From NCBI GenBank assembly GCA_043228905.1, contig JBHGNT010000017.1, positions 2,046,001-2,110,000 on the forward strand: a stretch of DNA of 64,000 nucleotides. Direction: 5' to 3'. Positions 7,778 through 50,738 of this stretch are shown piece by piece (the stretch's first letter is position 1; each line of letters begins with the position of its first letter). The position numbers were made by a program, and so were the translations under genes. Source of the DNA: Azolla caroliniana (lineage: Eukaryota; Plantae; Polypodiophyta). The notes under the pieces are model-generated. The model ran no database searches. It was not told the DNA's origin and was given only the letters and a program-made list of their open reading frames with translations.

Positions 7778-9669
7778 GATTCCGACCACGGGCCAAAGGG
7801 GGGCTTGGCCTCATAGACCCCTTAATGCAATGTCGAGCATTGCTAGCCAAAATGATGGTTCGATGCCTCCTCCAGGTAAGGGGTGCTGGAAGGTTCTACT
7901 TCGCAATAGGTTGCAGGCAGGGACTCCCAAGTATGGTAGGCCTTGGCCTGACTCCTTGAATTGGTGTTGCACGAGCGGAGTCCCACCCAAGATGGCTTGT
8001 CATTTGGAGGAGAGGGTCACGAACTCCATCTTGCGGGCATGGTGTCACGTACGACATCATTTGGTCAAGCACACACCGGAGACACTAATCGAGTGGTCTG
8101 GACAACCATTATTTTGGAACCCTCAGGTGCGAACAAGTGACGACATGATGTTAGGGCAGCTTAAGGGCCTAGCATGGGGAAAGTTGGCGCAAACAGGGCT
8201 CCACTCTATAGATGATTGGAGACGCACAGTGGCTTTAGGAGGAGCCCACGAGGTCCCATTCCCTCCCCTCAAGGGAGCCATGAAAATGCGGAGATTGATA
8301 GTTGAGGTAGTTGATAGGGTTCCGATGGGGGAGGTGAGAGTGGATGCTTGGTTCGGTCTCTTTGATGAGGCTGGAAGGGTTAAGTTGTTGAAGGGCGTGA
8401 GCGGATCGGGAAGAGATACAATTTTTGGGGAGAGTCAGAGTAGGGGCTCTTGGCACCCAATCTGCGTGGTGGCACAAGTTGATAACATCTGGAAGACAGA
8501 CCCGGATGTTGCTAAGGTGGAACCCCATTGGAAGTTATGGGTATATGGTTGTCGTCCCCTCATTGAACTAGAATGGAACCCAGGGGATTTCAGGTGGAAA
8601 CATGATGGCAGATTTCGCCATTTCTTCGAGTACAACACTAAACTGGATCGGACTTTTCAACTACAGCTAGACGGCCCCTTACGCAATGGTTGGCGTACAT
8701 TGGGCATCCCTGATGAGGTGTTCATTACCTTTTGGAAGAGTCTCTAGCGTCTCCACATGCCGGGAAAGATAAAGTTTTTTTGGTGGCAAATCGGTCATAA
8801 TGTGGTTCCCGTTGGCAAATGGCTAGGTGAACGTGGCGGCCCGTTAGGCTGCCCACTTTGCCATTCACCTATTGAGACTCTGAAGCATTGTATGTGGGAT
8901 TGCCCTCAAGCTCAAAAGGTATGGGATAGAGTGACTCACCTCCTTGCGGCATGTGAAGTGGAAGGAACAACATCGTGGAGTGTTGCAGCATGGATTGATC
9001 ACTTCGTTGATAGGTGGACAGACGCCTTCAATGCGGATAGTTGGTGCAACATATGCATGAGAGGCAAAATCGCCAAGATTCGATTTGAGAGAGGCTTGCA
9101 GTCCGCATCCCCTAAGTTCCCGGAAATTTGGATGCTGATTGTAGGCTTCACCCTGTGGTATGTATGGATAGCGCGTTGCCTAAAGGTCTTTCAAGATCTA
9201 GTGTGGCCCCCGGAGGAAGTGATCATGGACATATGGTTTGCGCTTATCAGCTGCCTACGAGGGCAATTGGACGAGGTTTGTAGCCATTCCAATGATGTGG
9301 TCACTGCCCGTTTGCGGTTTTGGCAGAAATGGCAGAACACGCCTATGGTGACACAAGGAGGAAGTGGCCCGATGTTGAACTACCAGCCCCCACGCTGGCT
9401 GTTTCCGACTCACTTACCACCCTCCCTTCGTTGTCAGCCCCAAGAGTTGTCTCGTACTAGCCAACACTGAAGGGCGTCGCTTTTAGCTATAGGTACTTAC
9501 ATTAAGTAGTCAGTCTGAAAGGTGATGTAACTAGTCTTATTTTCTTGAACTTGATCGGAGGGAGATTCCCCGATCTATGTATAAGCCTCCTTGTACATTC
9601 TCTTTGTAATAACCCTTCCTAACTAATGGGAAAGTAGCTTCATTTTGGAAAAAAAGAAAAAGAAAAAAG
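7778..9669 (+). mobile_element. 5'-truncated L1-type LINE inserted in the Copia protease region
   Basis: Begins RPRAKGGLGLIDP. Contains ORFs 7737-8747 and 8757-9470 with zf-RVT (PGKIKFFWWQ...CPLCHSPIETLKHCMWDCPQAQKVW). A-rich tail at 9649-9669. Confidence 0.88.
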
Positions 9670-11399
9670 ATGTGTGGTATGTACTCAATGTAACAAAGAA
9701 ATGTCTTTTGGTCAATTAGTAGGGAAGGGTATCGATGTGTTATTTAATAAATTTGGATGCAGAATAACAAGTTCAAATATAGGAGAGACGATTATATCTA
9801 GAAGAAAAGTAATACACGCGTTTATGTTGAGTGATACAAAAAACAAATGTTTGGTTGCAAATGAGGAAATGAATTCGAGATGTGGCATAAGAGACTAGGG
9901 CATGTGAGTGCAGAAGGACTTCTAGATATGAACAATAATAATCGTTTTACCTTTGTGTGAGCAACGTTGTAAACCATTAGAGTTAGTTAATACATATGTT
10001 TTTGGTCCTTCACAAGTTCCAGTCATTGGAGTGTCAAGGTATTTTTCAACAGTTATTGATGATTACTCAATAATGGTTTGGATATGCTTTACACAAAATA
10101 AAAGTGATGTTTTTTCAAAGCTCGTTGAATACAAGAAAATGGTAGAAATTAAATGTGATAGGAAAATCAGCGTACTTTGAAGTGATGGAGGGAGTGAGTA
10201 TATGTACATTGAGTTTGATAAATATTTGAAAACAAATGGTATCATAAGACAAGTCACCCCTCAAATGATTGAGTGGCAAAAATATAAAATAGAAACATTT
10301 TAGAGACACTGAGAGCGATGTTGTCGACTCTAGTTCATCAAAATAAGTTGGTTTTGGGTTTATGCATGACATTATGCAATGACTTTAATAAACAAAATCC
10401 TAACAATCATAATCGATACTAATACTCCCGAGTCCCATTGAGTTGTCCCAAGTTTATACGTTAAATATTTTTAGATGTGTTTGCTATATTCATTTACCTA
10501 GTCAAGTACTGCAAAATCTTGATGAGAAAGCAATAAAATGCATTTTTCTAGGAATGATGCCATAAAAAATGGATGTAAATGCTTTGATGCAGTTAATGAT
10601 AACTTTACCTTTTTTTAAATGTGAAATTTAGATGAAATACATTACAGAAAATCATTGGAGTGTGAGGTGCAAATGCCTTTGTCAAGTGAGGCAAGGGACA
10701 TGAATGAAGATAGTGATGGTGAACATGGGAAAAAGGATGAGATTGCAGATGAATTTGACATAAATAATATGACATCAACTTTATAATTGAGAAGATCTAC
10801 TAAAGTAAGAAAACTTGTTCAAAGGTTAGCATATGATAGTTGTATTGCACAATATTATCTACTCGTGGGCCGTGGCTAAATTTACTAATTACCGCGAGCC
10901 TAATTGTTTTGAAGATGCATGTGAGAAATCAAAGTGAATGTATGCTATGCACGAAGAATTGATGCATTGCATAAAAATGTTATACCTAGGAGGCTAATGC
11001 CTAGACCCATAGGGATAAAGGATGTAATTAGTTGTGGATGAGTGTATTGGTCTTAGCTCAAATGGTTCTTTAAATAGTCGTAACACACAAGTAGTGGCCA
11101 AAGGTTATTCTCAAAAGTATGGTGGAGATCATGAAGAAACTTTTGCACCAATGGCTAAAATGATGTCGATTATATTTTTTATTTCTGTGGCAACAACTCT
11201 AAATTGGACTTTAAATAAAATCGATGTTAAAATTGTTTTTCTAAATGATATTTTGACGGAATAAGTGTTCGTGGAACAATTAGAAGGTTCCAAAAAACAA
11301 TCTCAATCTTAACTTTGCATGCAACTTGAAAAAGTGATTTTTATGGATTGAAACAAACAGCAAGCTAATTATGGATTAAAATGTTGAGAAACTACTTGT

Positions 11400-16334: not shown

Positions 16335-17879
16335 ATGCCTCCAAATTACGCCGATCCGGTCGACGTCCCCTACTTCTTCTCACAGCTGCCGCACCCACGC
16401 CATGACCATCATGACCAGGACCATGAGCACCATGACCATGACCATGACCATGACCATGACTATGACCGCGTCCTACTGGAGGGCGCCTTGTTTCGCCGCT
16501 CCGACCCTTTCCCTTACCTTTTCCTTGTGGCCATGGAGGCCGGCAGCATGCCACGTGCATTGCTCCTCCTCCTCCTCCTCCCCATTTCCTGGCTCCTCGC
16601 TCAATCTGGCCACCGCGCTTCCGCCTTCAACCTCCTCCTCTTCGTCGCCGTCTCCGGCCTCCGCCTCAAGGACGTGGAGGCCGTGGCCAGGGCCGTCCTC
16701 CCCCGCTTCCTGTCCGAGGACGTCTCCGCCACCGCTTGGAAGAAGCTCTGCACCTCGCAATCCCACGGATGGGCGGCGCTCGGGCCGCGTCGGAGTCGGC
16801 GTCGGCGGCTCTGCGTGGTCACGGAATGGCCGCGTGCCTTCGTGGAGCCATTCGCTCGCTACCAGCTGGGCGCGGAGCAGGTCGTGGGAAGCGAGCTCAT
16901 GGTGGCTCCCCGCACTGGCCGCTGCATTGGTTTCGTCAGCTCCCCCCCAACTCCTCCTCCTGGCCACAAGCTGGCGCATGTTTCTCCTGACCCGAAGCTG
17001 GCCCATGTCCCAGAGGAAGAAGGGTTGGCGGACCTGGCGAACCCAGTGGTGTTCCACGACGGCCGGCTTGCGCAACGGCCTACGCCGCTGCTCGCGCTGC
17101 TCATCTTCCTCTGGATGCCCGTGGGGATACTGCTGGCGCTCTTCCGCCTCCTCATATGTGGCCACTTCGTGCCATTCCGTTGGTGGCTACCGGCGGTGAG
17201 GCTGTCGGGGATCAACATCATCGTGAAAGGGAAGATGCCAGAGGAGGAGGAGGAGCAGGGCGGCGGGCGGCTTATTGTGTGCAACCACCGGACGCTGGCG
17301 GATCCCATCATGATATCGGTGGCACTGGGGCGTCCCGTCACGGCCGTGACGTACAGCCTGAGCCGAGTGTCGGAGATGGTGGCGCCCATCACGACGGTTC
17401 GGTTGGACCGGAACGCCGCGGCGGATCTGAAGAAGCTGAGACATTTAGTGGAGGAGGAGGGGAGGACGGTGGTGGTTTGCCCCGAGGGGACTACGGGCCG
17501 CGAGCCCCTCCTCCTCCGGTTCAGCGCGCTCTTCGCCGAGGTGACCGACCGAATCCTCCCGGTCGCCATCAACACCAAGGTCTCCCTCTTCCACGGCACC
17601 ACAGTCCGCGGATTCAAGGCCCTCGATTCCTTCTTCTTCCTCATGAACCCCTCCCCGACGTACGAGATCCATTTCCTGGAGCCGCTCCCCCGCCACGCTA
17701 CGTGCGGTTCTGGGGGCGTGTCCCGGGTCGATGTGGCCAACCACGTGCAGCGGCTCATCGCATCCTCTCTTGGCTTCCGGTGCTCCTCGTTCACGCGCCG
17801 GGACAAGTACCGCTTCCTCGTCGGGAGTGACGGCTCCGTCACCCCGTCCTTGCAACCCTTCTCTTCCGTCCGCAGTTAA
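16335..17879 (+). CDS. GPAT: sn-2 glycerol-3-phosphate acyltransferase (land-plant GPAT1-8 family, cutin/suberin type), intronless, 514 aa
   Basis: Acyltransferase motifs CNHRTLADP (HxxxxD), AVTYSLSRVSE, CPEGTT.REP.LLRFSALFAE, FFFLMNP and VANHVQR. The N-terminal FPY.FLVA.EAG and PVVFHDGRL.QRPTP blocks are typical of this family. Confidence 0.95.
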   Translation: MPPNYADPVDVPYFFSQLPHPRHDHHDQDHEHHDHDHDHDHDYDRVLLEGALFRRSDPFPYLFLVAMEAGSMPRALLLLLLLPISWLLAQSGHRASAFNLLLFVAVSGLRLKDVEAVARAVLPRFLSEDVSATAWKKLCTSQSHGWAALGPRRSRRRRLCVVTEWPRAFVEPFARYQLGAEQVVGSELMVAPRTGRCIGFVSSPPTPPPGHKLAHVSPDPKLAHVPEEEGLADLANPVVFHDGRLAQRPTPLLALLIFLWMPVGILLALFRLLICGHFVPFRWWLPAVRLSGINIIVKGKMPEEEEEQGGGRLIVCNHRTLADPIMISVALGRPVTAVTYSLSRVSEMVAPITTVRLDRNAAADLKKLRHLVEEEGRTVVVCPEGTTGREPLLLRFSALFAEVTDRILPVAINTKVSLFHGTTVRGFKALDSFFFLMNPSPTYEIHFLEPLPRHATCGSGGVSRVDVANHVQRLIASSLGFRCSSFTRRDKYRFLVGSDGSVTPSLQPFSSVRS

Positions 17880-37914: not shown

Positions 37915-38078
37915 GGGGGGGCTCTCCTATAGACCTCGACATTAGCGCAATATCAAGGCGACTAGCTACCCCCATCAAAGAAATTAGGTTAATATCATGT
38001 GGTATTATAGGCCATGTATGAGATATTAAACTGACAAGAACAAATACTACACTTGATCTTAGCCAAAAGGCTGAGAAA
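37915..38078 (-). pseudogene. U2: U2 snRNA pseudogene
   Basis: Contains TTTCTCAGCCTTTTGGCTAAGATCAAGTGTAGTATTTGTTC... The 5' ATACC is lost, stem-loop III is deleted and the SL IV loop is mutated (ATTGCGCT). Confidence 0.88.
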
Positions 38079-38100
38079 ACTCTCATCCCTTTTATTGCCA

Positions 38101-38141
38101 TACTTATAGGTTGGAGGCAAGCAAGCTTCCGTATGTGGGAT
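38101..38141 (-). promoter_or_regulatory. snRNA promoter: USE (ATCCCACATAC) plus TATA box
   Basis: USE at 38141-38131, a 22-nt spacer, then TATAAGTA from 38108. Confidence 0.8.
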
Positions 38142-39552: not shown

Positions 39553-41523
39553 GCCTAAGGATCCGGTGAGATATTTGTTCCTCTGCACATCAAAGATAAC
39601 CAGTGCCTTGCTCTCTGTTAGGCTAGCAGGTAGGCCCCCTTCTAAAGCATTTCCATGGACACTAAAACTCTAGAGATTGGGCATCTTGGACAGATCCAAG
39701 CTCTCTATCTTCCCAGTCAAATTGTTTTTAGAGAGTCGTAAAGTCTGAAGAGCCCTCAGGTTATGCAAAACGTCGACAGGGACGATCCCTTGCAGGTTGT
39801 TCGTGGAAAAATCTAATATCTGCAGCTTTGTCAACGCCCCAATTTCAAGAGGAATGTGCCCAGAAAGCTCATTGTTATTTAATGTTAAGCTCTCTATGTT
39901 TATTAGGCGGCCGACAGATGGAGGAATGCTTCATATGAGGTCGTTGTGTCCAAGATCTAAGTATGTGAGACCTTCCAGGTTTCCCAACAACGCTGGTATG
40001 TTGCCCTGCAAGTTGTTGGAAACCAGATCTAGCATTTGCAGGTTTGCCAATCTACTGAAACATTCAGGTATGCTCCCTGTAAGACCCAGGGACAGGGGGT
40101 ATCCTGGTGGAAGGAAGCTGAAGTAGTCAGATCGGGACATCCGCTCCATATCGAACCACTGCATTTGGGTACAGTTGCAAAGCTCAACGGGAACTGGACC
40201 CTCGAGATTGGCTGTAAATAGAGAGAGTACTTGGAGGTTTATGAGCATTCCCAGTTTACTCGGGATGGAACCCATGAGAGGGTTGAACCCTAATCGGAGC
40301 TCGATGAGTTGTGAGCAGCTAGAGAGTGCGGCTGGTATCTTCCCTGTCAGTTTGTTGTTCTGGAGAAGCAAGTTCTGTAGCTGGGTGAGGTTCCCGAGAC
40401 TAAATGGAATGGAGCCCTCAAGACTTGTGTGAGAGAGATCCAGTTTCTTCAGAGAGGCACATGTGCCTATAGAAGTAGGAATGTTACCCGTGAGATTTAT
40501 TCCTTCTATGCATATGTGTTCGATGGTAGATCCAGCAGCGCTACAGAAGCCAAAAGTGGATGGCAGTGACCCATGGAGCTTGTAGGGGCGTGGATCGTAG
40601 GGATGATTATCCACAGTGTCTACCACATTAAGATCTTGGATTACCAGCATTTGGAGGTGAGAAAGCTGCCAAATTGATGGGGGGATGGAGCCTTGTAGAC
40701 CCGTTACAGTTAAGATCAAGATCTGCAACTGCTGGCAATCTCCCAAGGAAGAGGGAAACGATGCCCCGGATGCATCAAGGCCAGCCAGTAAAAACACCTC
40801 AATGGTAGCACAGAAAGAGAAATTAGCAGTGGCTGGAAAAGAGGTGGGCGAGATGCTGAGAAGTGGAGGTGAGGAGTCGGACCAGGTGTCAGTGATGTAG
40901 AGTTGCTGAAGAGCCGGGAGATGGGTTCACAGCTCTGGAGGAATAACGCCGCTGAGGCCAGTGTGTCTGAGGCGCAGGGTTTGGAGGTTGGGGGAGTTGA
41001 GGATGAGGGAACGGGGAATGTGACCAGAGAGATGGGCGTTGTAGCTGAGGTCGAGGTATGTGAGGGAGGAGTTGGGTTGTTGGGTGAAGAAGAGGAGGGG
41101 GCCTGAGAAGTTGTTGTGGGGGAGATCGAGAAGAGAAAGGGAAGGGAGGAGAGACAGAGAAGGGGAGATGGAACCAGAGAGGTTGCAGGAGGAGAGGTTG
41201 AGGGAGGTGATGTGCAAGCTGTCGTCACAGAGCAGGCCGTACCAGCCAGCAGTGCCATTGGAGTAGCAGTAGGAGGGCGGTGCCGCCACATCACTAGTGG
41301 AGTTGGAGGAAATGGAGGTGGTGGTGTTCCAGGAGGATAGGCAAGAAGAGGGGTCGTGGGTGATTGCATCCTTGATTGTCATGAGAGCTTGTGCTATGGC
41401 CGTGTCGGAGGAGGAAGAAGAGGTCGGAGAGGGAGCGGGCGCCACAACTTCCGCAGCCATTGCTGAATTTACGATCACAATAAGGATTGAGAGGAGATGG
41501 CTAGTGCATCGGAGGTTCAACAT
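39553..41523 (-). pseudogene. LRR receptor-like protein pseudogene (paralog of 43622-47506)
   Basis: Same signal peptide start (MLNLRC). It has a TGG>TGA stop at 40927, a frameshift at about 39931 and no 3' LRRs or TM segment. Confidence 0.9.
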
Positions 41524-43621
41524 CGCATCAAGGGAACACGAAGGAGTGTTGGGCTGGTGGGCGAGTGTTTTACATGATGTAGGGGAGTGAAGAGGTGGAA
41601 TTTTTGGAGAGTAGGAAACCACCACCAACCGCAGCATAAAGAAAAATATGTTGCGGTTGAGGTGATGTGCGCCTTCCAATCATCTACTCATTGACAAAAA
41701 CCTGTTGTGGTTGTATAAATCAAAGAATAAGAATAAGAAGTCATGGACAAAACATTGAGAAAGGTATGAAAATCTTGACCGTCATAACTAGAGAATTCAT
41801 GATTTTTTCTTTACCAATCCCATGACTTGGAAAATGACTGTCTCCCTCCACTGGACTCCATCACCACCAATCAACCCCCTTTTGATAAGCCTAACCCACC
41901 ATAGTTTAGCCAAAATGCTCAAGTTTTTAAAGCATAGAGAATTGGTTATTATGGTAGTATGCAGGATGTAACAACGATAAGACATCATTGGTTTGTTTCC
42001 AAGTAATCACCATAGACAGAACAAAGGGATGTTATTGATACTAAAGATCGCCAATACCAAGATATAAAGTAGATGATCCATACCATTACAAGACCCTTGC
42101 AACCCTTGATAGTCTCACAATTAGATCCTCACAACCATTACAAGGGCACATTGTACTTTGATAATTGTGTGCTTAACAACACATAACTAGTTTTGCAGAA
42201 TGGATTGAAGGTTTTTTAATGATTTATTGTTAGATGATTCATTGATTGTTTGGGTGGGGGCTGATGGTGGTTACTTTGAATGTCCGAAATTTGGGTGTAC
42301 CAGGACTATGTAATGTATAAATAACACATGGGGTAGTGTAGATGTATGTGATGTCAATAACAGCAGATCGGGTAGAGTCATGGTTGTATACAGAAGATAT
42401 AAACAAACGATAGGGGAACATGGAGTAATGATGGGTGCAAATATTTGTAATAGACACAGACAGACAGACAGACAGACAGAATCATGGATTGGATAAGGAG
42501 GCATATATATACATATATATAGATCAGTCGGGTAGGAAGCATCACATGGCATGTCTATACACCCATGATCACTCCTGGACATGCTAGATGCCGCCAAATT
42601 CTTACCATGATACGGGTAAAGATAATCACGGGTACACATACATACCCCAACCAATAGGGAGGAGTGTAAAGAGAATTGTAGGCAAACGGGCAGTTATCTA
42701 CCAGCCCTACACTACGCATTGCTTGTTTAGGTTCAGGTCTTGCATTATTTACATTTTGGTCATTGGGTCCGCATTATCGGCCCAACCAGAGAATGGAGAG
42801 CGTGTGGTTGTGAAGTCTTTGTCGTGTGAATGCGACTTGGTCAGATCCATGTATCTATTATGGGGGCCCTTCCCAGCTAAACACGGTATTTTCCATGTAT
42901 ACGTCCATCATTAAATTGTTGCTGCTCGGATCCTGCGCCTCACTAATTTTACTTCCCTATGTGTGGCTTCCACACAGACATTCGTCCACTTTCATCATAT
43001 GATACCCCCAGTGACTAACAATATTTCGTTTGGGCCCACTACTTTGACAAATTTTACAAATCGACGTAAGAAAGCTATATATCGTATATACACATGAATA
43101 ATTAGATTTGGATTTTTTTGAAGAGTCAAAATTTTTTTGTATTATGTTTTGAATGCTTGATATAAAGTGGAGTACGAGATTAGGAAGATTGATTTAATGG
43201 GAACTTTGTTTCCTTATAAAATTGGGATAATTAGTCTTGGATCACTTATGTTGGGTACTTTGGATTTCATGATTTTAAAGGGTTGGCAAGATGGGGGTAG
43301 GGTAGTGAAAGTGAGGGTAGACTAGATGGACTTTGCCATGCTAAGTCCTCAAAGAATTGCTTCACGAGGCAAAGCCTCCACCAATTGTAGGGACATGGTA
43401 ATGTTTAATGTCGTCATTTTCATTAAATAAAGTTTTTAAACTATCAAATATGGGAGGTAATATGTATCCAGATGTAGTTGGTCCGTAATCTATCTACCCT
43501 ATATCGTCGGTCTTCTCAATTGGAAGACGTGGGAGTAAAAATGAATACATACATATGTATACAGTATACATATCATGTAGTAGAAACTCTATGTCGGGGA
43601 TTATTTTAGTCGTGCGAGTAT

Positions 43622-46600
43622 TCACTTCAATTTTGAGGAGAGGAGACGGCAGATGAGTATGCCAAGTGCAAGCCCAGCGGGATAGCCCACTATAAATGCC
43701 CACGCGGATACAAACTCATTGAACCAAATCACGATCAATTGCTGCGTTTGCCTGGCTCCGCTGCCCACATCACTAGTAGTCACATTGTTGTTGCTTGTTG
43801 TGTTGCAAGGGAGAAGAGGGTAGCCACACAGCCCCCGGTTGTTCTCGTAGCTCACATTAGTGAACCTGGTGTCGAAGTTGTTCTGCGTGGGAATGGCTCC
43901 TTCCAGTTGGTTATGGGCGAGGTTGAGGCTAGAGAGGCTGCCCAGAGACGTGAGATCTTGCGGGATGCCACCGCTGAGCTGGTTGTACGACAGGTCCAAC
44001 TCCTCCAAATGCATCAGCTTGCCGAATGTAGCCGTAGGTATAGTGCCGCTGATTCGGTTGTGGGACAGGTTGGCCCCTGTCAAACCCTGCAGCTCCCCGA
44101 AGCTCTCCGGAATTTCGCCTTCCAGATCGTTCATGGACACATCAAAGTAGATCCGTGCACTCAGCACATACTCAAGAATGTAGACAGTGTTCTTCAGCGT
44201 GACAGGCACCTCTTCGTAGAGGGTCTTCTGGTTACTGTCTGCGGTTTGATTGAGCTTGAAGTAGAAGAGGTACGTGAGAGTCGCAGGGAAGTGACCGCCG
44301 AAGCGATTGTTGGAGAGGTCCAGTGCCTGCAGACTGGGAAGCTTCCAAACCCAACCCGGGATGTCTCCGCTAAGCCGGTTGTAGCTCACTGACAGTACCC
44401 TGAGGTTGGATAAACCAGTGATGTCAGGCGTAGTAGTATTGCCTAAGGATCCGGTGAGATATTTGTTCCTCTGCACATCAAAGATGATCAGTGCCTTACT
44501 CTCTGTTAGGCCAGCAGGTAACCCCCCTTCCAAAGCATTTTCATAGACACTAAAACTCTCGAGGCTGGGCATCTTGGACAGATCCAAGCTCTCTATCTTC
44601 CCAGTCAAATTGTTTTGAAACAGACGTAAGACCTGAAGAGCCGTAAGGTTACGTAAATGGTCAACAGGGAGGATCCCTTGCAGGTTATTTTTGGAGAGGT
44701 CTAATCTCCGCAGCTTTGTCAATGCGCCGATTTCAGGAGGAATGTTTCCAGAAAGCTTGTTGTTGTTTAATGTTAAGGACTCCGTGTTTATTAGGCGGCT
44801 GACAGATGAAGGAATGCTTCCGGTGAGGTTGTTGTGTCCAAGATCTAGGTTCGTGAGACCTTCCAAGCTCCCCAAGCACGCTGGTATAGTGCCCTGCAAG
44901 TTGTTGGAAACCAAAACTAGCGTCTGCAGGCTTGTGATGCCACAAATGGAGGAAGATATGGATCCTTCTAGAGCATTGCCTCCGAGATTTAGAGTAGTGA
45001 CGGTGTTGTGTTGTGCCAGGCCTTGGAGTAGTTGTTCTGGGATTGTTCCAGTCAGATTATTAGAACCGACGCTGAGTAGTTCCACGTTGGGAAGCTGGCC
45101 AAGCTGTGGTGGGATAGATCCTGTTAAGCGGTTATACGAGAGGTTCAGATATGTCAGCTGTGGAAAATTCCAGTTCAACTCAGAGGGGAAGGTATCGACC
45201 ATGCTGCAATAAGACAGATCCAAGTATTGAAGCTGCGTTAAATTTTGCAATACCTTCCTAGGGAAGCCCCCCTCAATATGGCTGAGCTGCCATGCCAGCG
45301 TTTGCAGGTTTGCCATTCTACCGAAACACTCAGGTATGCTCCCTGTAAGACCCTGGGATACGGGGTATCCTGGTGGAAGGTAGTTGAAGAAACCAGATTC
45401 CTGCATCCATCCCACATCGAACCACACCATTTGGGTACAGTTGCAAAGCTCAACGGGAACTGGACCCTCAAGATTGGCCGTAAAGAGAGAGAGTACCTGG
45501 AGGTTTATGAGCATTCCCAGCTCACTGGGGATGGAACCCCTTAGAGGGTTGAACCCTAACCGGAGTTGGGTGAGTTGTGAGCAGCTAGAGAGTGTGGCCG
45601 GTATCTTGCCTGTCAGGTTGTTGCTCTGGAGGGCCAAGGTCAGTAGCTGGGTGAGGTTCCCGAGGCTATCAGGGATGGGGCCTTCCAGGCTTGTGTGAGA
45701 GAGATCCAGATGCTGCAGAGAGGTACAGGTGCCTACAGAAGCAGGAATGTGGCCAGTGAGATTTATGCCATCTATGTACATGTCTTCGATGGTAGATCCA
45801 GCAGCACTACAGAAGCCAAAACTGGATGGCAGTGACCCGTGGAGCTTGTAGGGGCGTGGATCGTAGGGATCACTATCCACGGTCTCTACCACATTAAGAT
45901 CTTCGATAACAAGTGTTTGAAGGTGAGGAAGCTGCCAAATGGATGGGGGGATGGAGCCTTGTAGACCCGTGGTAGACAAAATCAAGGCCTGTAGCTGGGT
46001 GAGGTTGCCGAGGCTAGAAGGGATGGAACCCTCGAGGTTTGTGATAGAGAGATCCAGATTCTGCAGAGAGGCACAGGTGCCAATAGAAGCAGGAATGTGG
46101 CCAGTGAGATTTATGCCATCTATGTACATGTCTTCGATGGTAGATCCAGCAGCGCTACAGAAACCAAAAGTGGATGGCAGTGACCCGTGGAGCTTGTAGG
46201 GGCGTGGATCATAGGGATTATTATCCACGGTCTCTACCACATTAACATCTTGGATAACAAGTGTTTGGAGGTGAGGAAGCTGCCAAATGGATGGGGGGAT
46301 GGAGCCTTGTAGACCCGTGGTAGACAAAATCAAGGCCTGTAGCTGGGTGAGGTTGCCGAGGCTAGAAGGGATGGAACCCTCGAGGTTTGTGATAGAGAGA
46401 TCCAGATTCTGCAGAGAGGCACAGGTGCCAATAGAAGTAGGAATGTGGCCAGTGAGATTTATGCCATCTATGTACATGTCTTCGATGGTAGATCCAGCAG
46501 CGCTACAGAAACCAAAAGTGGATGGCAGTGACCCGTGGAGCTTGTAGGGGCGTGGATCGTAGGGATTATTATCCACGGTCTCTATCACATTAAGATCTTG

Positions 46601-47506
46601 GATTACCAGCGTTTGGAGGTGAGGAAGCTGCCAAATGGATGGGGGGATGGAACCTTGTAGACCCGCGACAGTCAAGGACAAGATCTGCAACTGTTGGCAA
46701 TCTCCCAAGGAAGAGGGAAAGGATGCCCCGGATGCATCAAGGCCAAACAGTACAAACGCCTCAATGGTAGCACAGAAAGAGAAATTAGCAGTCGCTGGAA
46801 AAGAGGTGGGCGAGATGCTGAGAAGTGGAGGTGAGGAGTCGGACCAGGTGTCAGTGATGTAGAGTTGCTGAAGAGCCGGGAGATGGGTCCACAGCTCTGG
46901 AGGAACAAGGCCGCTGAGGCCAGTGTGTCTGAGGCGCAGGGTTTGGAGGTTGGGGGAGTTGAGGATAAGGGAAGGGGGTATGTCACCAGAGAGCAGGGCG
47001 TTGTAGCTGAGGTCGAGGTATGTGAGGCTGGAGGAGTTGGGTTGTTGGGTGAAGAAGAGGGAGGAAGAGAGAGGGCCTGAGAAGTTGTTGTAGGAGAGAT
47101 CGAGAAGAGAAAGGGAAGGGAGGAGAGCCAGAGAAGGGGAGATGGAACCAGAGAGGTTGCAGGAGGAGAGGTTGAGGGAGGTGACGTGGAAGCTGTCATC
47201 ACAGAGCAGGCCGTACCAGCCGACAGTGCCGTTGGAGGGGCAGTAGGAGGGCGGTGCTGAGGTGTGGACAACATCACTATCACTAGAAGAGGTGGAGGTA
47301 GAATTGGTGGTCCAGGAGGAGAGGCAAGAAGACGGGTCGTGGGTGATGGCATCCTTGATTGTCATGAGAGCTTGTGCTTGTGCTACTGCCATTTCGGAGG
47401 AGGTGGTCGGAGAGGGAGCGGGCGCCACAACCTCCGCAGCCATTGCTGAATTGATGATGATAATAAAGATTGAGAGGAGATGGAGAGTGCACCGGAGGTT
47501 CAGCAT
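43622..47506 (-). CDS. LRR receptor-like protein (signal peptide, LRRNT, many plant LRRs, island, TM, no kinase), about 1294 aa, intronless
   Basis: Signal peptide MLNLRC...SAMA, LRRNT W.GLLCD, LxxLxLxxNxLxGxIP repeats, an island before the last four LRRs, LCG.PL..C cap, TM with GYPAGLALG (GxxxGxxxG) and a short basic tail. The ORF-track start at 47572 is GTG, so the ATG at 47506 is preferred. Confidence 0.93.
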   Translation of the reverse strand: MLNLRCTLHLLSIFIIIINSAMAAEVVAPAPSPTTSSEMAVAQAQALMTIKDAITHDPSSCLSSWTTNSTSTSSSDSDVVHTSAPPSYCPSNGTVGWYGLLCDDSFHVTSLNLSSCNLSGSISPSLALLPSLSLLDLSYNNFSGPLSSSLFFTQQPNSSSLTYLDLSYNALLSGDIPPSLILNSPNLQTLRLRHTGLSGLVPPELWTHLPALQQLYITDTWSDSSPPLLSISPTSFPATANFSFCATIEAFVLFGLDASGASFPSSLGDCQQLQILSLTVAGLQGSIPPSIWQLPHLQTLVIQDLNVIETVDNNPYDPRPYKLHGSLPSTFGFCSAAGSTIEDMYIDGINLTGHIPTSIGTCASLQNLDLSITNLEGSIPSSLGNLTQLQALILSTTGLQGSIPPSIWQLPHLQTLVIQDVNVVETVDNNPYDPRPYKLHGSLPSTFGFCSAAGSTIEDMYIDGINLTGHIPASIGTCASLQNLDLSITNLEGSIPSSLGNLTQLQALILSTTGLQGSIPPSIWQLPHLQTLVIEDLNVVETVDSDPYDPRPYKLHGSLPSSFGFCSAAGSTIEDMYIDGINLTGHIPASVGTCTSLQHLDLSHTSLEGPIPDSLGNLTQLLTLALQSNNLTGKIPATLSSCSQLTQLRLGFNPLRGSIPSELGMLINLQVLSLFTANLEGPVPVELCNCTQMVWFDVGWMQESGFFNYLPPGYPVSQGLTGSIPECFGRMANLQTLAWQLSHIEGGFPRKVLQNLTQLQYLDLSYCSMVDTFPSELNWNFPQLTYLNLSYNRLTGSIPPQLGQLPNVELLSVGSNNLTGTIPEQLLQGLAQHNTVTTLNLGGNALEGSISSSICGITSLQTLVLVSNNLQGTIPACLGSLEGLTNLDLGHNNLTGSIPSSVSRLINTESLTLNNNKLSGNIPPEIGALTKLRRLDLSKNNLQGILPVDHLRNLTALQVLRLFQNNLTGKIESLDLSKMPSLESFSVYENALEGGLPAGLTESKALIIFDVQRNKYLTGSLGNTTTPDITGLSNLRVLSVSYNRLSGDIPGWVWKLPSLQALDLSNNRFGGHFPATLTYLFYFKLNQTADSNQKTLYEEVPVTLKNTVYILEYVLSARIYFDVSMNDLEGEIPESFGELQGLTGANLSHNRISGTIPTATFGKLMHLEELDLSYNQLSGGIPQDLTSLGSLSSLNLAHNQLEGAIPTQNNFDTRFTNVSYENNRGLCGYPLLPCNTTSNNNVTTSDVGSGARQTQQLIVIWFNEFVSAWAFIVGYPAGLALGILICRLLSSKLK
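45647..46690 (-). repeat. Intragenic 348-bp (116-aa) unit, three copies
   Basis: Identical landmarks at 45939, 46287 and 46635, each 348 bp apart. Confidence 0.95.
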
Positions 47507-47627
47507 TGCATCACAGGAATAGGAAGGATTGTCGAAACGGTGTTGCGCTGGTTGATGAGTGTTGTGTTCCACACGATGGAGGGGAGTTAAGAGATGGAAA
47601 TTGTGGCAGAGGAGGAAACCACCAGCA

Positions 47628-49352: not shown

Positions 49353-49391
49353 GTCCCACATAGAGAGGACGGGGAGGAAGGGAGCTATAAA
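49353..49391 (+). promoter_or_regulatory. U1 promoter: USE GTCCCACATAG plus TATAAA
   Basis: USE at 49353-49363, a 22-nt spacer, then TATAAA at 49386-49391 (position -32). Confidence 0.9.
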
Positions 49392-49417
49392 TTGAGTGCT
49401 TTGAGCGGCAGCTAAAC

Positions 49418-49580
49418 ATACTTACCTGGGCGGGGTCTATCGGTGATCAGCAAGGCCGATGGCTTAGGGCCGGCGCCTCCATTGCACTACAGGAGGGGCT
49501 GTTTGCCCTAGCATCTCCCCAATGTGGGAGAGTGCACGTCATAATTTGTGGCAGCGGGGGCTCGCGTTCGCGCGGCCCCT
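49418..49580 (+). ncRNA. U1: U1 spliceosomal snRNA
   Basis: 5' ATACTTACCTGG, SL II loop ATTGCACT, Sm site AATTTGTGG and SL IV GGGGCTCGCGTTCGCGCGGCCCC. Confidence 0.96.
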
Positions 49581-50465
49581 TTCTCAATCAATCGAATCAA
49601 ACTCTGAATGTCTGCCCGAAAATTGGGTGTAAATGAACTACTTAATGTGTAAATGACATGGGTATACTTTAGATGTATGTGATGTAAATAACAGAAGACA
49701 GGACGGTGTAGAGGGGGGAGTACATGTATGTGATGTAAATTAGCATAGATGGGGTGGCGTCGTCATGGATGTATACAAAAGGGATAAACAAACGATAGGG
49801 TAAAGATGGAGGCAAATATATATATATATATAATAGACAGACAGAATCATGGATTGGATATGGAGGCATAAATATATGATATATCTATAGATCAGTCGGG
49901 TAGGAAGCATCACAACGCATGTCTATACACTCATGGACATGCTAGATGCCGCCAAATTCTTACCATGATACGGGCGCGGAAAATCACGGGTATACATACC
50001 CCAACCAATAGGAGGTGTAAAGAGAATGGTAAGCAAACGGGCAGTTATCTACCAGCTAGGCCTACACTACCCATTCCTTGTTTAGGTTCAGGCGCATTAG
50101 TGGCCCAATCCGAGAGTAGAGAGCGTGCGGTTGTCAAGTCTTTGCCGTGTGAATGCGACGGACTTGGTCAGATGTATATATCTATTATGACCCCTTCCCA
50201 GCTAAACACCATATTTTCCATGTCTATGTCCCATCAGTAACCTGTTGCTGTTCGGATCCCGCGCCTCAGCAATTTTACTTACACATGTTTGGCTTCCACA
50301 CAGATACATATTCCGTGCACATTCATCATCTGGTACCCCAAACGACTAGGAAGGTTCAATTAACTTATCCTACAGAAGATAAGGAATTCGGAGACACTCT
50401 CGCGTTATTTACTTATTCATCATTTATCCTTACGGGAAGAACATTTTGGTCATGATTGTAGATGG

Positions 50466-50672
50466 GGGGGCGCGCCTGTATGACCTCGGCGTCAGTGCAA
50501 TACCAAGGCGACGCACGCAGCTCCCAGAGACAGCAAGCTGCCTCGAACGGGTGCTGCCCCCCATGAAAGAAATTAGGTTAATATCATGTGGCCTTATAGA
50601 CCACGTATCAGATATTAAACTGATAAGAACAGATACTACACTTGATCTTAGCCAAAAGGCCGAGAAAGGTAT
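50466..50672 (-). ncRNA. U2: U2 spliceosomal snRNA
   Basis: Reverse strand reads ATACCTTTCTCGGCCTTTTGGCTAAGATCAAGTGTAGTATCTGTTCTTATCAGTTTAATATCTGATA, including the branch-point recognition sequence GTAGTA. SL III and an SL IV with an ATTGCACT loop are present. The 3' end is approximate. Confidence 0.95.
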
Positions 50673-50697
50673 GATTTGGGTTTTCCTTCTACTTCCA

Positions 50698-50738
50698 TAC
50701 TTATAGGCTGGACACTAGCAGGCTTCAGTATGTGGGAT
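50698..50738 (-). promoter_or_regulatory. U2 promoter: USE ATCCCACATAC plus TATAAGTA
   Basis: USE at 50738-50728, a 22-nt spacer, then TATAA from 50705 (position -33). Confidence 0.88.

What the first reader, a model, noticed from the sequence alone, without database searches (positions are those of the whole stretch)
49353..50738. U1 and U2 snRNA genes with a USE-TATA spacing one helical turn shorter than the angiosperm Pol II rule
Seen: U1 (USE 49353-49363, TATA 49386), U2 (USE 50738-50728, TATA 50705) and the U2 pseudogene (USE 38141-38131, TATA 38108) all have exactly 22 nt between the 11-nt USE and TATAA. The U1 and U2 spacers are unrelated in sequence, so the length looks constrained. 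Established: in angiosperms this spacing selects the polymerase, about 32-36 bp for Pol II genes (U1, U2, U4, U5) and about 23-26 bp for Pol III genes (U6, U3). Seen: neither gene has a downstream oligo-T terminator, and both are followed by CAATCA(N)n 3'-box-like sequence. Inference: either this lineage uses a different promoter geometry for Pol II snRNAs, so the spacing code is not universal in land plants, or these U1/U2 genes have switched polymerase. The 3' ends favour the first reading.
Basis: partly seen in the sequence, partly recalled or inferred. Interest (0 to 1): 0.82.

Follow-up and report, generated by a model that had tools for sequence, protein, structure and literature searches.

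The report
Fern snRNA promoters break spacing rule
In this fern and its relatives, the U1 and U2 splicing-RNA genes have promoters one DNA turn shorter than in seed plants and almost the same length as the U6 promoter, so the textbook spacing rule for choosing RNA polymerase II or III in plants cannot apply as written here.

Summary
Confirmed and extended. The window is fern DNA with intact U1 (49418-49582) and U2 (50672-50465) genes and a U2 pseudogene; all three have a 22-nt USE-TATA gap. Fifteen distinct U1/U2 promoters from the window and related assemblies have gaps of 21-23 nt (12 at 22), none long, including a 3.39-kb tandem array. U6 promoters from the same assembly series have 24 nt (6 of 8); seed-plant controls give 32-33 (U2) and mostly 24 (U6). 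No U1/U2 copy has a T-run terminator; complete U6 copies do. [quoted passage not shown] A Pol III switch is not excluded (about 10%). Not found in the literature searched. The scan noted the same short spacing for U1/U2 and U5 elsewhere in this genome (s1-527350, s1-529291, s1-504188).

The parts
49353..49363 (+). U1 upstream sequence element (USE, GTCCCACATAG)
49364..49385 (+). U1 22-nt USE-TATA spacer, purine-rich, 68% G+C
49386..49393 (+). U1 TATA box (TATAAATT), starting at -32
49418..49582 (+). U1 snRNA gene, full length
   Evidence: Rfam RF00003 134.7 bits, model 1-166
49585..49596 (+). CAATCA and a degenerate 3'-box-like stretch after U1 (1 mismatch); no T-run
50453..50458 (-). CAATCA after U2; 3'-box fit has 2 mismatches; no T-run
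50465..50672 (-). U2 snRNA gene, 208 nt, convergent with U1 (882 nt between 3' ends)
   Evidence: Rfam RF00004 143 bits
50654..50657 (-). Internal GC-flanked T4 at U2 +16 to +19, a minimal Pol III stop signal
   Evidence: four T as minimal signal per 10.1101/2022.07.06.498962
50698..50705 (-). U2 TATA box (TATAAGTA), starting at -33
50706..50727 (-). U2 22-nt USE-TATA spacer, 59% G+C
50728..50738 (-). U2 USE (ATCCCACATAC)
37920..38083 (-). U2 pseudogene: stem III largely deleted, many broken pairs, TATA-to-start distance 25 instead of 33
   Evidence: Rfam 84.9 bits with alignment
38101..38141 (-). Pseudogene promoter: USE 38141-38131, 22-nt spacer, TATA 38108-38101

Best explanation
These are ordinary working U1 and U2 genes transcribed by Pol II from a type 3 (USE plus TATA) snRNA promoter whose geometry differs from seed plants. 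SNAPc binds USE and positions TBP with TFIIA/TFIIB at a TATA box 22 nt away, one helical turn (10-11 nt) closer than the 32-33 nt of seed-plant U2, so USE and TATA keep the same rotational phase. U6 keeps the usual 24 nt. The one-turn difference that picks the polymerase in angiosperms is therefore absent, and the choice must rest on finer features that do separate the classes here: a 2-nt (about 70 degree) offset, the TATA sequence (TATAA.. versus alternating TATAT..) and a GC-rich versus AT-rich spacer. Shown: the geometry, its conservation, the U6 contrast, the lack of terminators. Inferred: Pol II use, and which fine feature decides. My split within this reading: offset and TATA type together about 0.5, TATA type or spacer composition alone about 0.2, an element not seen here about 0.15.
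For: Gap 22 in 12, 23 in 2 and 21 in 1 of 15 distinct U1/U2 promoters, none long. Length holds while sequence drifts: U1 versus U2 spacers average 34% identity, U2 versus U2 down to 32%. The set includes a 3.39-kb U1-U2 tandem array on high-coverage contigs. U6 of the same assembly series: 24 in 6 of 8; assembly ERZ1034409 gives both a U1-U2 pair at 22 (L127, U2 98% identical to the window's) and two U6 at 24 (L060, L084). Ceratopteris U6 gap 25 (PMC11638000 Suppl. Fig. S1). Controls: Cryptomeria U2 33; U2 32 on contigs that also carry U6 (L033, L120); 46 of 75 other U6 at 24; 38 seed-plant-type U2 with the USE core at -72 to -76 versus -63 to -65 in the fern group. Fifth TATA base is A in 14/15 U1/U2 and 0/8 U6; spacer G+C 61% versus 33%. 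First T4 lies 50 to 1830 nt downstream in 14 U1/U2 genes, whereas the complete U6 genes end in T6-T8. U2 has an internal T4. Human SNAPc engages Pol II and Pol III complexes in two rotated arrangements with only a 3-nt spacing difference (PMC11696126).
Against: No transcript, cap or ChIP evidence. By the Arabidopsis rule (32-34 Pol II, 23-24 Pol III; PMC8287931) these promoters read as Pol III, and the USE core at -63/-64 equals the seed-plant U6 position (-62 to -64). The 2-nt offset may be too small: human U6 tolerates -2/+3 nt (PMC11696126), two U1 copies sit at 23, and the TATA register in alternating TA boxes is ambiguous by 2 nt. The promoters are related by descent, so the small P values overstate the support. 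The U6 promoters come from related assemblies, not from this window's assembly.
Confidence: 0.82

Rival explanations
1. U1 and U2 (and perhaps U5) switched to Pol III in this fern lineage by losing one turn of spacer, as plant U3 did; 3' ends would be made by processing of long read-through transcripts.
For: USE position equals that of seed-plant U6. The angiosperm rule predicts Pol III. The U2 Sm-site T-run is interrupted in all fern-group copies, removing the T6 seen in a seed-plant copy. Precedents from my own knowledge: plant U3, trypanosome U2.
Against: No terminator near any of 14 3' ends. Internal T4 in U2 is kept. TATA class, spacer composition and gap all differ from fern U6. The interrupted Sm-site run also occurs in Cryptomeria U2 with a 33-nt gap, so it is not a sign of Pol III. 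All Sm-class genes would have had to switch together and rewire capping and export (own knowledge).
Confidence: 0.1
2. The promoters are ambiguous and recruit both polymerases; only Pol II products are matured through the 3' signal, while Pol III products stop at the internal T4 or run on and decay.
For: Human 7SK, U6 and RPPH1 promoters are also read by Pol II (PMC11696126). The classes differ by only 2 nt here and overlap at 23.
Against: The class-specific TATA sequence and spacer composition suggest selection for discrimination. No direct evidence of mixed products.
Confidence: 0.05
3. The short-gap copies are silent or transposon-spread derivatives and the working U1/U2 genes have the long gap.
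For: The window has a decayed copy with the same gap; another reader noted a transposon carrying a U1+U2 pair in this genome (s1-518926, unchecked). My sample was pulled by similarity to the window's U2.
Against: All fern-type U2 hits with a readable USE had the short position, and the query did not include the spacer. Genes score 130-155 bits with full model coverage. The geometry is kept across samples whose U2 differ by up to 14%.
Confidence: 0.03

Closest known systems
Angiosperm Pol II snRNA promoter (Arabidopsis U1/U2/U4/U5; USE + TATA, 32-34 bp)
   Same: Same USE core, a TATAAA-type box starting at -32/-33, Sm-class genes, no T-run terminator.
   Different: Gap is 21-23 nt, one helical turn shorter; the 3' box is degenerate.
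Plant Pol III type 3 promoter (U6, U3, telomerase RNA; 23-24 bp)
   Same: USE at -63/-64 from the start; three-turn USE-TATA arrangement.
   Different: Gap 22 rather than 24; TATAA rather than TATAT box; GC-rich spacer; no T-run terminator.
Human SNAPc-dependent U1/U5 versus U6 promoters (PMC9758055, PMC11696126)
   Same: [quoted passage not shown]
   Different: [quoted passage not shown]
Insect PSEA/PSEB versus PSEA/TATA promoters (PMC1761439)
   Same: Small class differences near one shared SNAPc site decide the polymerase.
   Different: In insects the SNAPc site itself differs between classes; here the 11-nt USE is not distinguishable between U1/U2 and U6.
Green-algal snRNA promoters (PMC8287931)
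   Same: Another green lineage that does not use the one-turn spacing code.
   Different: Algal Pol II promoters are TATA-less; these are not.

Membership tests
U1 snRNA (RF00003) | Full-length covariance-model match above the gathering score | tested here: met
   134.7 bits versus 69.5, model 1-166
U2 snRNA (RF00004) | Full-length covariance-model match above the gathering score | tested here: met
   143 bits versus 46, model 1-192
Plant type 3 snRNA promoter | USE (RTCCCACATCG-like) upstream of a TATA box near -30 | tested here: met
Angiosperm Pol II snRNA promoter | USE-TATA gap of 32-34 bp | tested here: not met
   21-23 nt in 15 of 15 promoters; rule from PMC8287931
Angiosperm Pol II snRNA promoter | 3' box CA-N3-10-AGTNNAA downstream | tested here: inconclusive
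   0 of 14 exact, 6 of 14 with one mismatch against 12% background; copies are related
Angiosperm Pol II snRNA promoter | Amanitin-sensitive transcription, TMG cap, Pol II occupancy | not testable with these tools
   needs experiments; no RNA run held the stretch
Plant Pol III type 3 gene (U6-like) | USE-TATA gap of 23-24 bp | tested here: inconclusive
   22 in 12 of 15, 23 in 2; near but not at the 24 of U6 in the same series
Plant Pol III type 3 gene (U6-like) | T-run terminator at the 3' end | tested here: not met
   first T4 at 632 and 482 nt in the window, 50-1830 nt across 14 genes
Plant Pol III type 3 gene (U6-like) | No internal T-run of four or more | tested here: not met
   U2 has T4 at +16 to +19; U1 has none
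Insect-type code (polymerase set by SNAPc-site sequence) | Fixed base differences in the SNAPc site between Pol II and Pol III genes | tested here: not met
   the same USE variants (GTCCCACATAG, ATCCCACATAC, GTCCCACATAC) occur before U1/U2 and U6
Human/green-algal-type code (TATA presence) | Pol II promoters lack a TATA box | tested here: not met
   all 15 U1/U2 promoters carry a TATA or TACA box at a fixed place

The most novel reading that the evidence does not exclude
The major Sm-class spliceosomal RNAs U1 and U2 of this fern lineage have moved to RNA polymerase III, a switch known for these RNAs only in trypanosomatids (own knowledge), and make their 3' ends without T-run terminators.
Probability: 0.1. 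Interest if true: 0.9.

Novelty: new variant of a known kind. Interest (0 to 1): 0.68.

Why it matters
The USE-TATA spacing rule is stated for vascular or land plants as a whole (PMC8287931, PMC9841428) but rests on angiosperm experiments; the one broad promoter survey left out tracheophytes. A fern lineage where both promoter classes have a TATA box and differ by about 2 nt is a natural test of a live dispute in SNAPc structural biology: whether a 2-3 nt offset flips SNAPc between TFIIB and Brf-type complexes, or whether only the TATA box matters (PMC11696126). It also means that calling a fern non-coding RNA 'Pol III' from its USE-TATA distance (telomerase RNA, orphan small RNAs, guide-RNA promoters) is unsafe, and it raises the possibility that seed plants added the extra turn rather than ferns losing it.

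Tried and rejected
Hidden standard geometry: no second USE or later TATA gives a 32-36 gap. Interrupted U2 Sm-site T-run as a Pol III sign: rejected, Cryptomeria U2 has it with a 33-nt gap. USE-sequence code: rejected, same USE variants in both classes. Viral collection scans for U2 and U6 found nothing. The U1-frame protein search gave only 2 hits. Organisms of L123, L124, L130, L131 and L132 could not be named. The original Waibel and Filipowicz and Edoh papers are not held; the rule is cited through later papers. The Fajkus 2021 promoter figure and supplements are not held, so moss and liverwort gaps could not be read. Paper searches found nothing on fern U1/U2 promoter spacing; the library lacks most subscription journals. 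The large protein search and structure tools were not needed.

Full report
Observation. Rfam finds three snRNA loci in the window: U1 at 49418-49582 (+, 134.7 bits), U2 at 50672-50465 (-, 143 bits) and a decayed U2 at 38083-37920 (-, 84.9 bits). Each has an 11-nt USE followed after exactly 22 nt by TATAA. This pattern occurs three times in the window, at no other gap between 15 and 44, and never in 200 resampled windows. U1 and U2 spacers agree at 8 of 22 positions; the pseudogene spacer agrees with U2 at 16 of 22 and is not independent. The first run of four T lies 632 nt after U1 and 482 nt after U2. CAATCA follows both genes, but the match to the angiosperm 3' box is imperfect (1 and 2 mismatches).

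Source. The best full-length matches of the acyltransferase at 16335-17879 are from Adiantum and Ceratopteris (48-52% identity, 482-490 bits) ahead of seed plants (about 420 bits), so the window is from a fern distant from Pteridaceae. The pattern of sequencing runs (several related organisms in one 2018 study, leaf metagenomes) suggests Azolla, which is my inference and was not verified. A 185-aa ORF of the window is encoded exactly in ENA assembly ERZ1034433, 97% identical in DNA, which ties the ERZ10343xx-10344xx series of assemblies to close relatives of the window.

Related U1 and U2 promoters. I used spurious reading frames that overlap U2 and U1 as handles and fetched their contigs. The convergent U1-U2 pair recurs in L126, L127, L128/L129 and L130, with 790-1342 nt between the 3' ends, and in L128 as a 3390-nt tandem repeat on a contig of coverage 45. 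Among 15 distinct U1/U2 promoters of this group the gap is 22 in twelve, 23 in two (both U1 of L130) and 21 in one (L123). Spacer sequences drift (U1 versus U2 mean 34% identity; U2 versus U2 as low as 32%) while length holds. The seven short-gap U2 genes are all 206-208 nt and group together in a tree, with moderate support (87/89). L130 and L123 come from other studies and are 89% and 86% identical to the window's U2, so the geometry is older than one species, but I could not name them.

Controls. Cryptomeria japonica U2 has a 33-nt gap. Contigs L033 and L120 carry U2 at 32 together with a U6 gene. Read from the antisense frames, 38 seed-plant-type U2 genes have the USE core at -72 to -76, six fern-type genes at -63 to -65 and nine others at -68. 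So the method reproduces the known rule (32-34 for Pol II, 23-24 for Pol III in Arabidopsis; PMC8287931) and extends the long gap to a conifer.

U6. A metagenome scan gave 120 plant U6 loci. Ten come from the same ERZ series and have the same USE variants as the window. Of 8 distinct promoters, six have a 24-nt gap, one 23 (a truncated copy) and one 27. Assembly ERZ1034409 holds both L127 (U1 and U2 at 22; U2 98% identical to the window's) and U6 loci L060 and L084 (24). Ceratopteris U6 has 25 nt to TACATA (PMC11638000 Suppl. Fig. S1), and 46 of 75 other plant U6 promoters have 24. U6 has therefore not moved; only the U1/U2 class has.

What separates the classes. The USE does not: the same 11-mers precede U1, U2 and U6. 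Three things do: gap 22 versus 24, fifth TATA base A in 14 of 15 versus 0 of 8, and spacer G+C 61% versus 33%. These counts are on related sequences, so their nominal P values (about 1e-5) overstate the case. Both classes start the TATA box at -31 to -33.

Which polymerase. For Pol II: none of 14 U1/U2 genes has four T within 49 nt of the 3' end, while the four distinct U6 genes with a complete 3' end finish in T6-T8; U2 keeps an internal T4 at +16, and four T is the minimal Pol III stop signal (10.1101/2022.07.06.498962); the TATA boxes are of the TATAAA type seen in seed-plant U2. For Pol III: the USE sits where it sits in seed-plant U6, and the angiosperm rule would call these promoters Pol III. 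The interrupted T-run of the U2 Sm site looked like an adaptation to Pol III but is also present in Cryptomeria. I put Pol II at about 0.82, a switch at 0.10, dual use at 0.05 and silent copies at 0.03.

Mechanism (inferred). Plant SNAPc has the three core subunits (PMC10533338). In human structures SNAPc binds upstream of TBP and positions TFIIA and TFIIB (PMC9758055), and it engages Pol II and Pol III complexes in two rotated arrangements; one model attributes this to a 3-nt spacing difference, another to the TATA box alone, noting that U6 tolerates -2/+3 nt (PMC11696126). The fern gap of 22 equals the seed-plant gap of 32-33 minus one turn, so the rotational phase between USE and TATA is the same in fern and seed-plant Pol II promoters and about 2 nt off the U6 phase in both. 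The simplest model is that phase together with TATA type, not absolute distance, is the underlying signal, and that the extra turn in seed plants is an added safeguard. Two unidentified plant U2 genes with a 27-nt gap (L124, L131) and a TATA-less one (L132) do not fit a pure phase model and show that the geometry is labile outside seed plants; the direction of change is open.

Comparison and novelty. The genes are ordinary U1 and U2 and the promoter is a type 3 snRNA promoter. It fails the defining spacing of the angiosperm Pol II class and the terminator test of the Pol III class, and it fits neither the insect (SNAPc-site sequence; PMC1761439) nor the human or algal (TATA presence) code. The rule is written for vascular or land plants, the broad survey excluded tracheophytes, and the fern papers found describe only U6. 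I found no report of short-gap U1/U2 in ferns, within a library that lacks most subscription journals. Other readers in this scan noted the same short gap for U1/U2 and U5 elsewhere in this genome; those notes are unchecked and are not counted as support.

Verdict. Real, conserved, and apparently undescribed: a new variant of a known promoter type that removes the spacing code in a fern lineage and offers a direct test of how SNAPc chooses a polymerase. Interest 0.68; limited by the lack of expression and polymerase data and by uncertain taxonomic breadth.

Noticed in passing
window 42273-43017: A 76-78% identical copy of the stretch between U1 and U2 (49601-50348) lies beside the tandem LRR genes with both snRNA genes gone; with the U2 pseudogene at 38 kb it points to repeated local duplication of an LRR + U1/U2 block.
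   Followed up: partly
L128 1179-4732; L129; L126: U1-U2 convergent pair as a 3390-nt tandem repeat on contigs with coverage 13-46, against 2-4 for most U6 contigs of the series; the U1-U2 linkage is kept in L127 and L130.
   Followed up: partly
window 50564-50574 (-): U2 Sm site has an interrupted U-run in all fern-group copies and in Cryptomeria, unlike the U6 run of the seed-plant copy L120; fern-group U2 is 206-208 nt, about 12 nt longer than the others.
   Followed up: partly
L124 553-746; L131 near 7900-8300: U2 genes of an unidentified plant group with a variant USE (CCCATA core) and a 27-nt gap, half a turn from both known classes.
   Followed up: partly
L132 near 10000-10216: U2 on a 955-kb contig with USE core at -68 and no TATA box, as described for green algae.
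   Followed up: no
L060, L084, L110 U6 promoters: A second TATATAAG lies 14 nt after the USE, exactly 10 nt before the main TATA box.
   Followed up: no
L004, L033, L057, L120: Contigs of one unidentified plant carry U6 within 1-2.5 kb of U2 or U1 fragments, a mixed snRNA cluster.
   Followed up: partly
L002 805-1611 versus L113: Identical U6 and downstream 807 nt but different promoters (gaps 27 and 24); may be an assembly chimera or a recent promoter exchange.
   Followed up: no
window 43622-47572 and 39931-41679 (-): Tandem receptor-like LRR genes, the longer with a 348-nt unit repeated three times; already noted as s1-514590.
   Followed up: no
window 16335-17879 (+): Intronless glycerol-3-phosphate acyltransferase of a fern-specific branch.
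   Followed up: partly
public protein databases: Hundreds of annotated 'hypothetical proteins' are antisense translations of U2 snRNA genes, some named as kinases or ATPase-related; these are annotation artefacts.
   Followed up: partly
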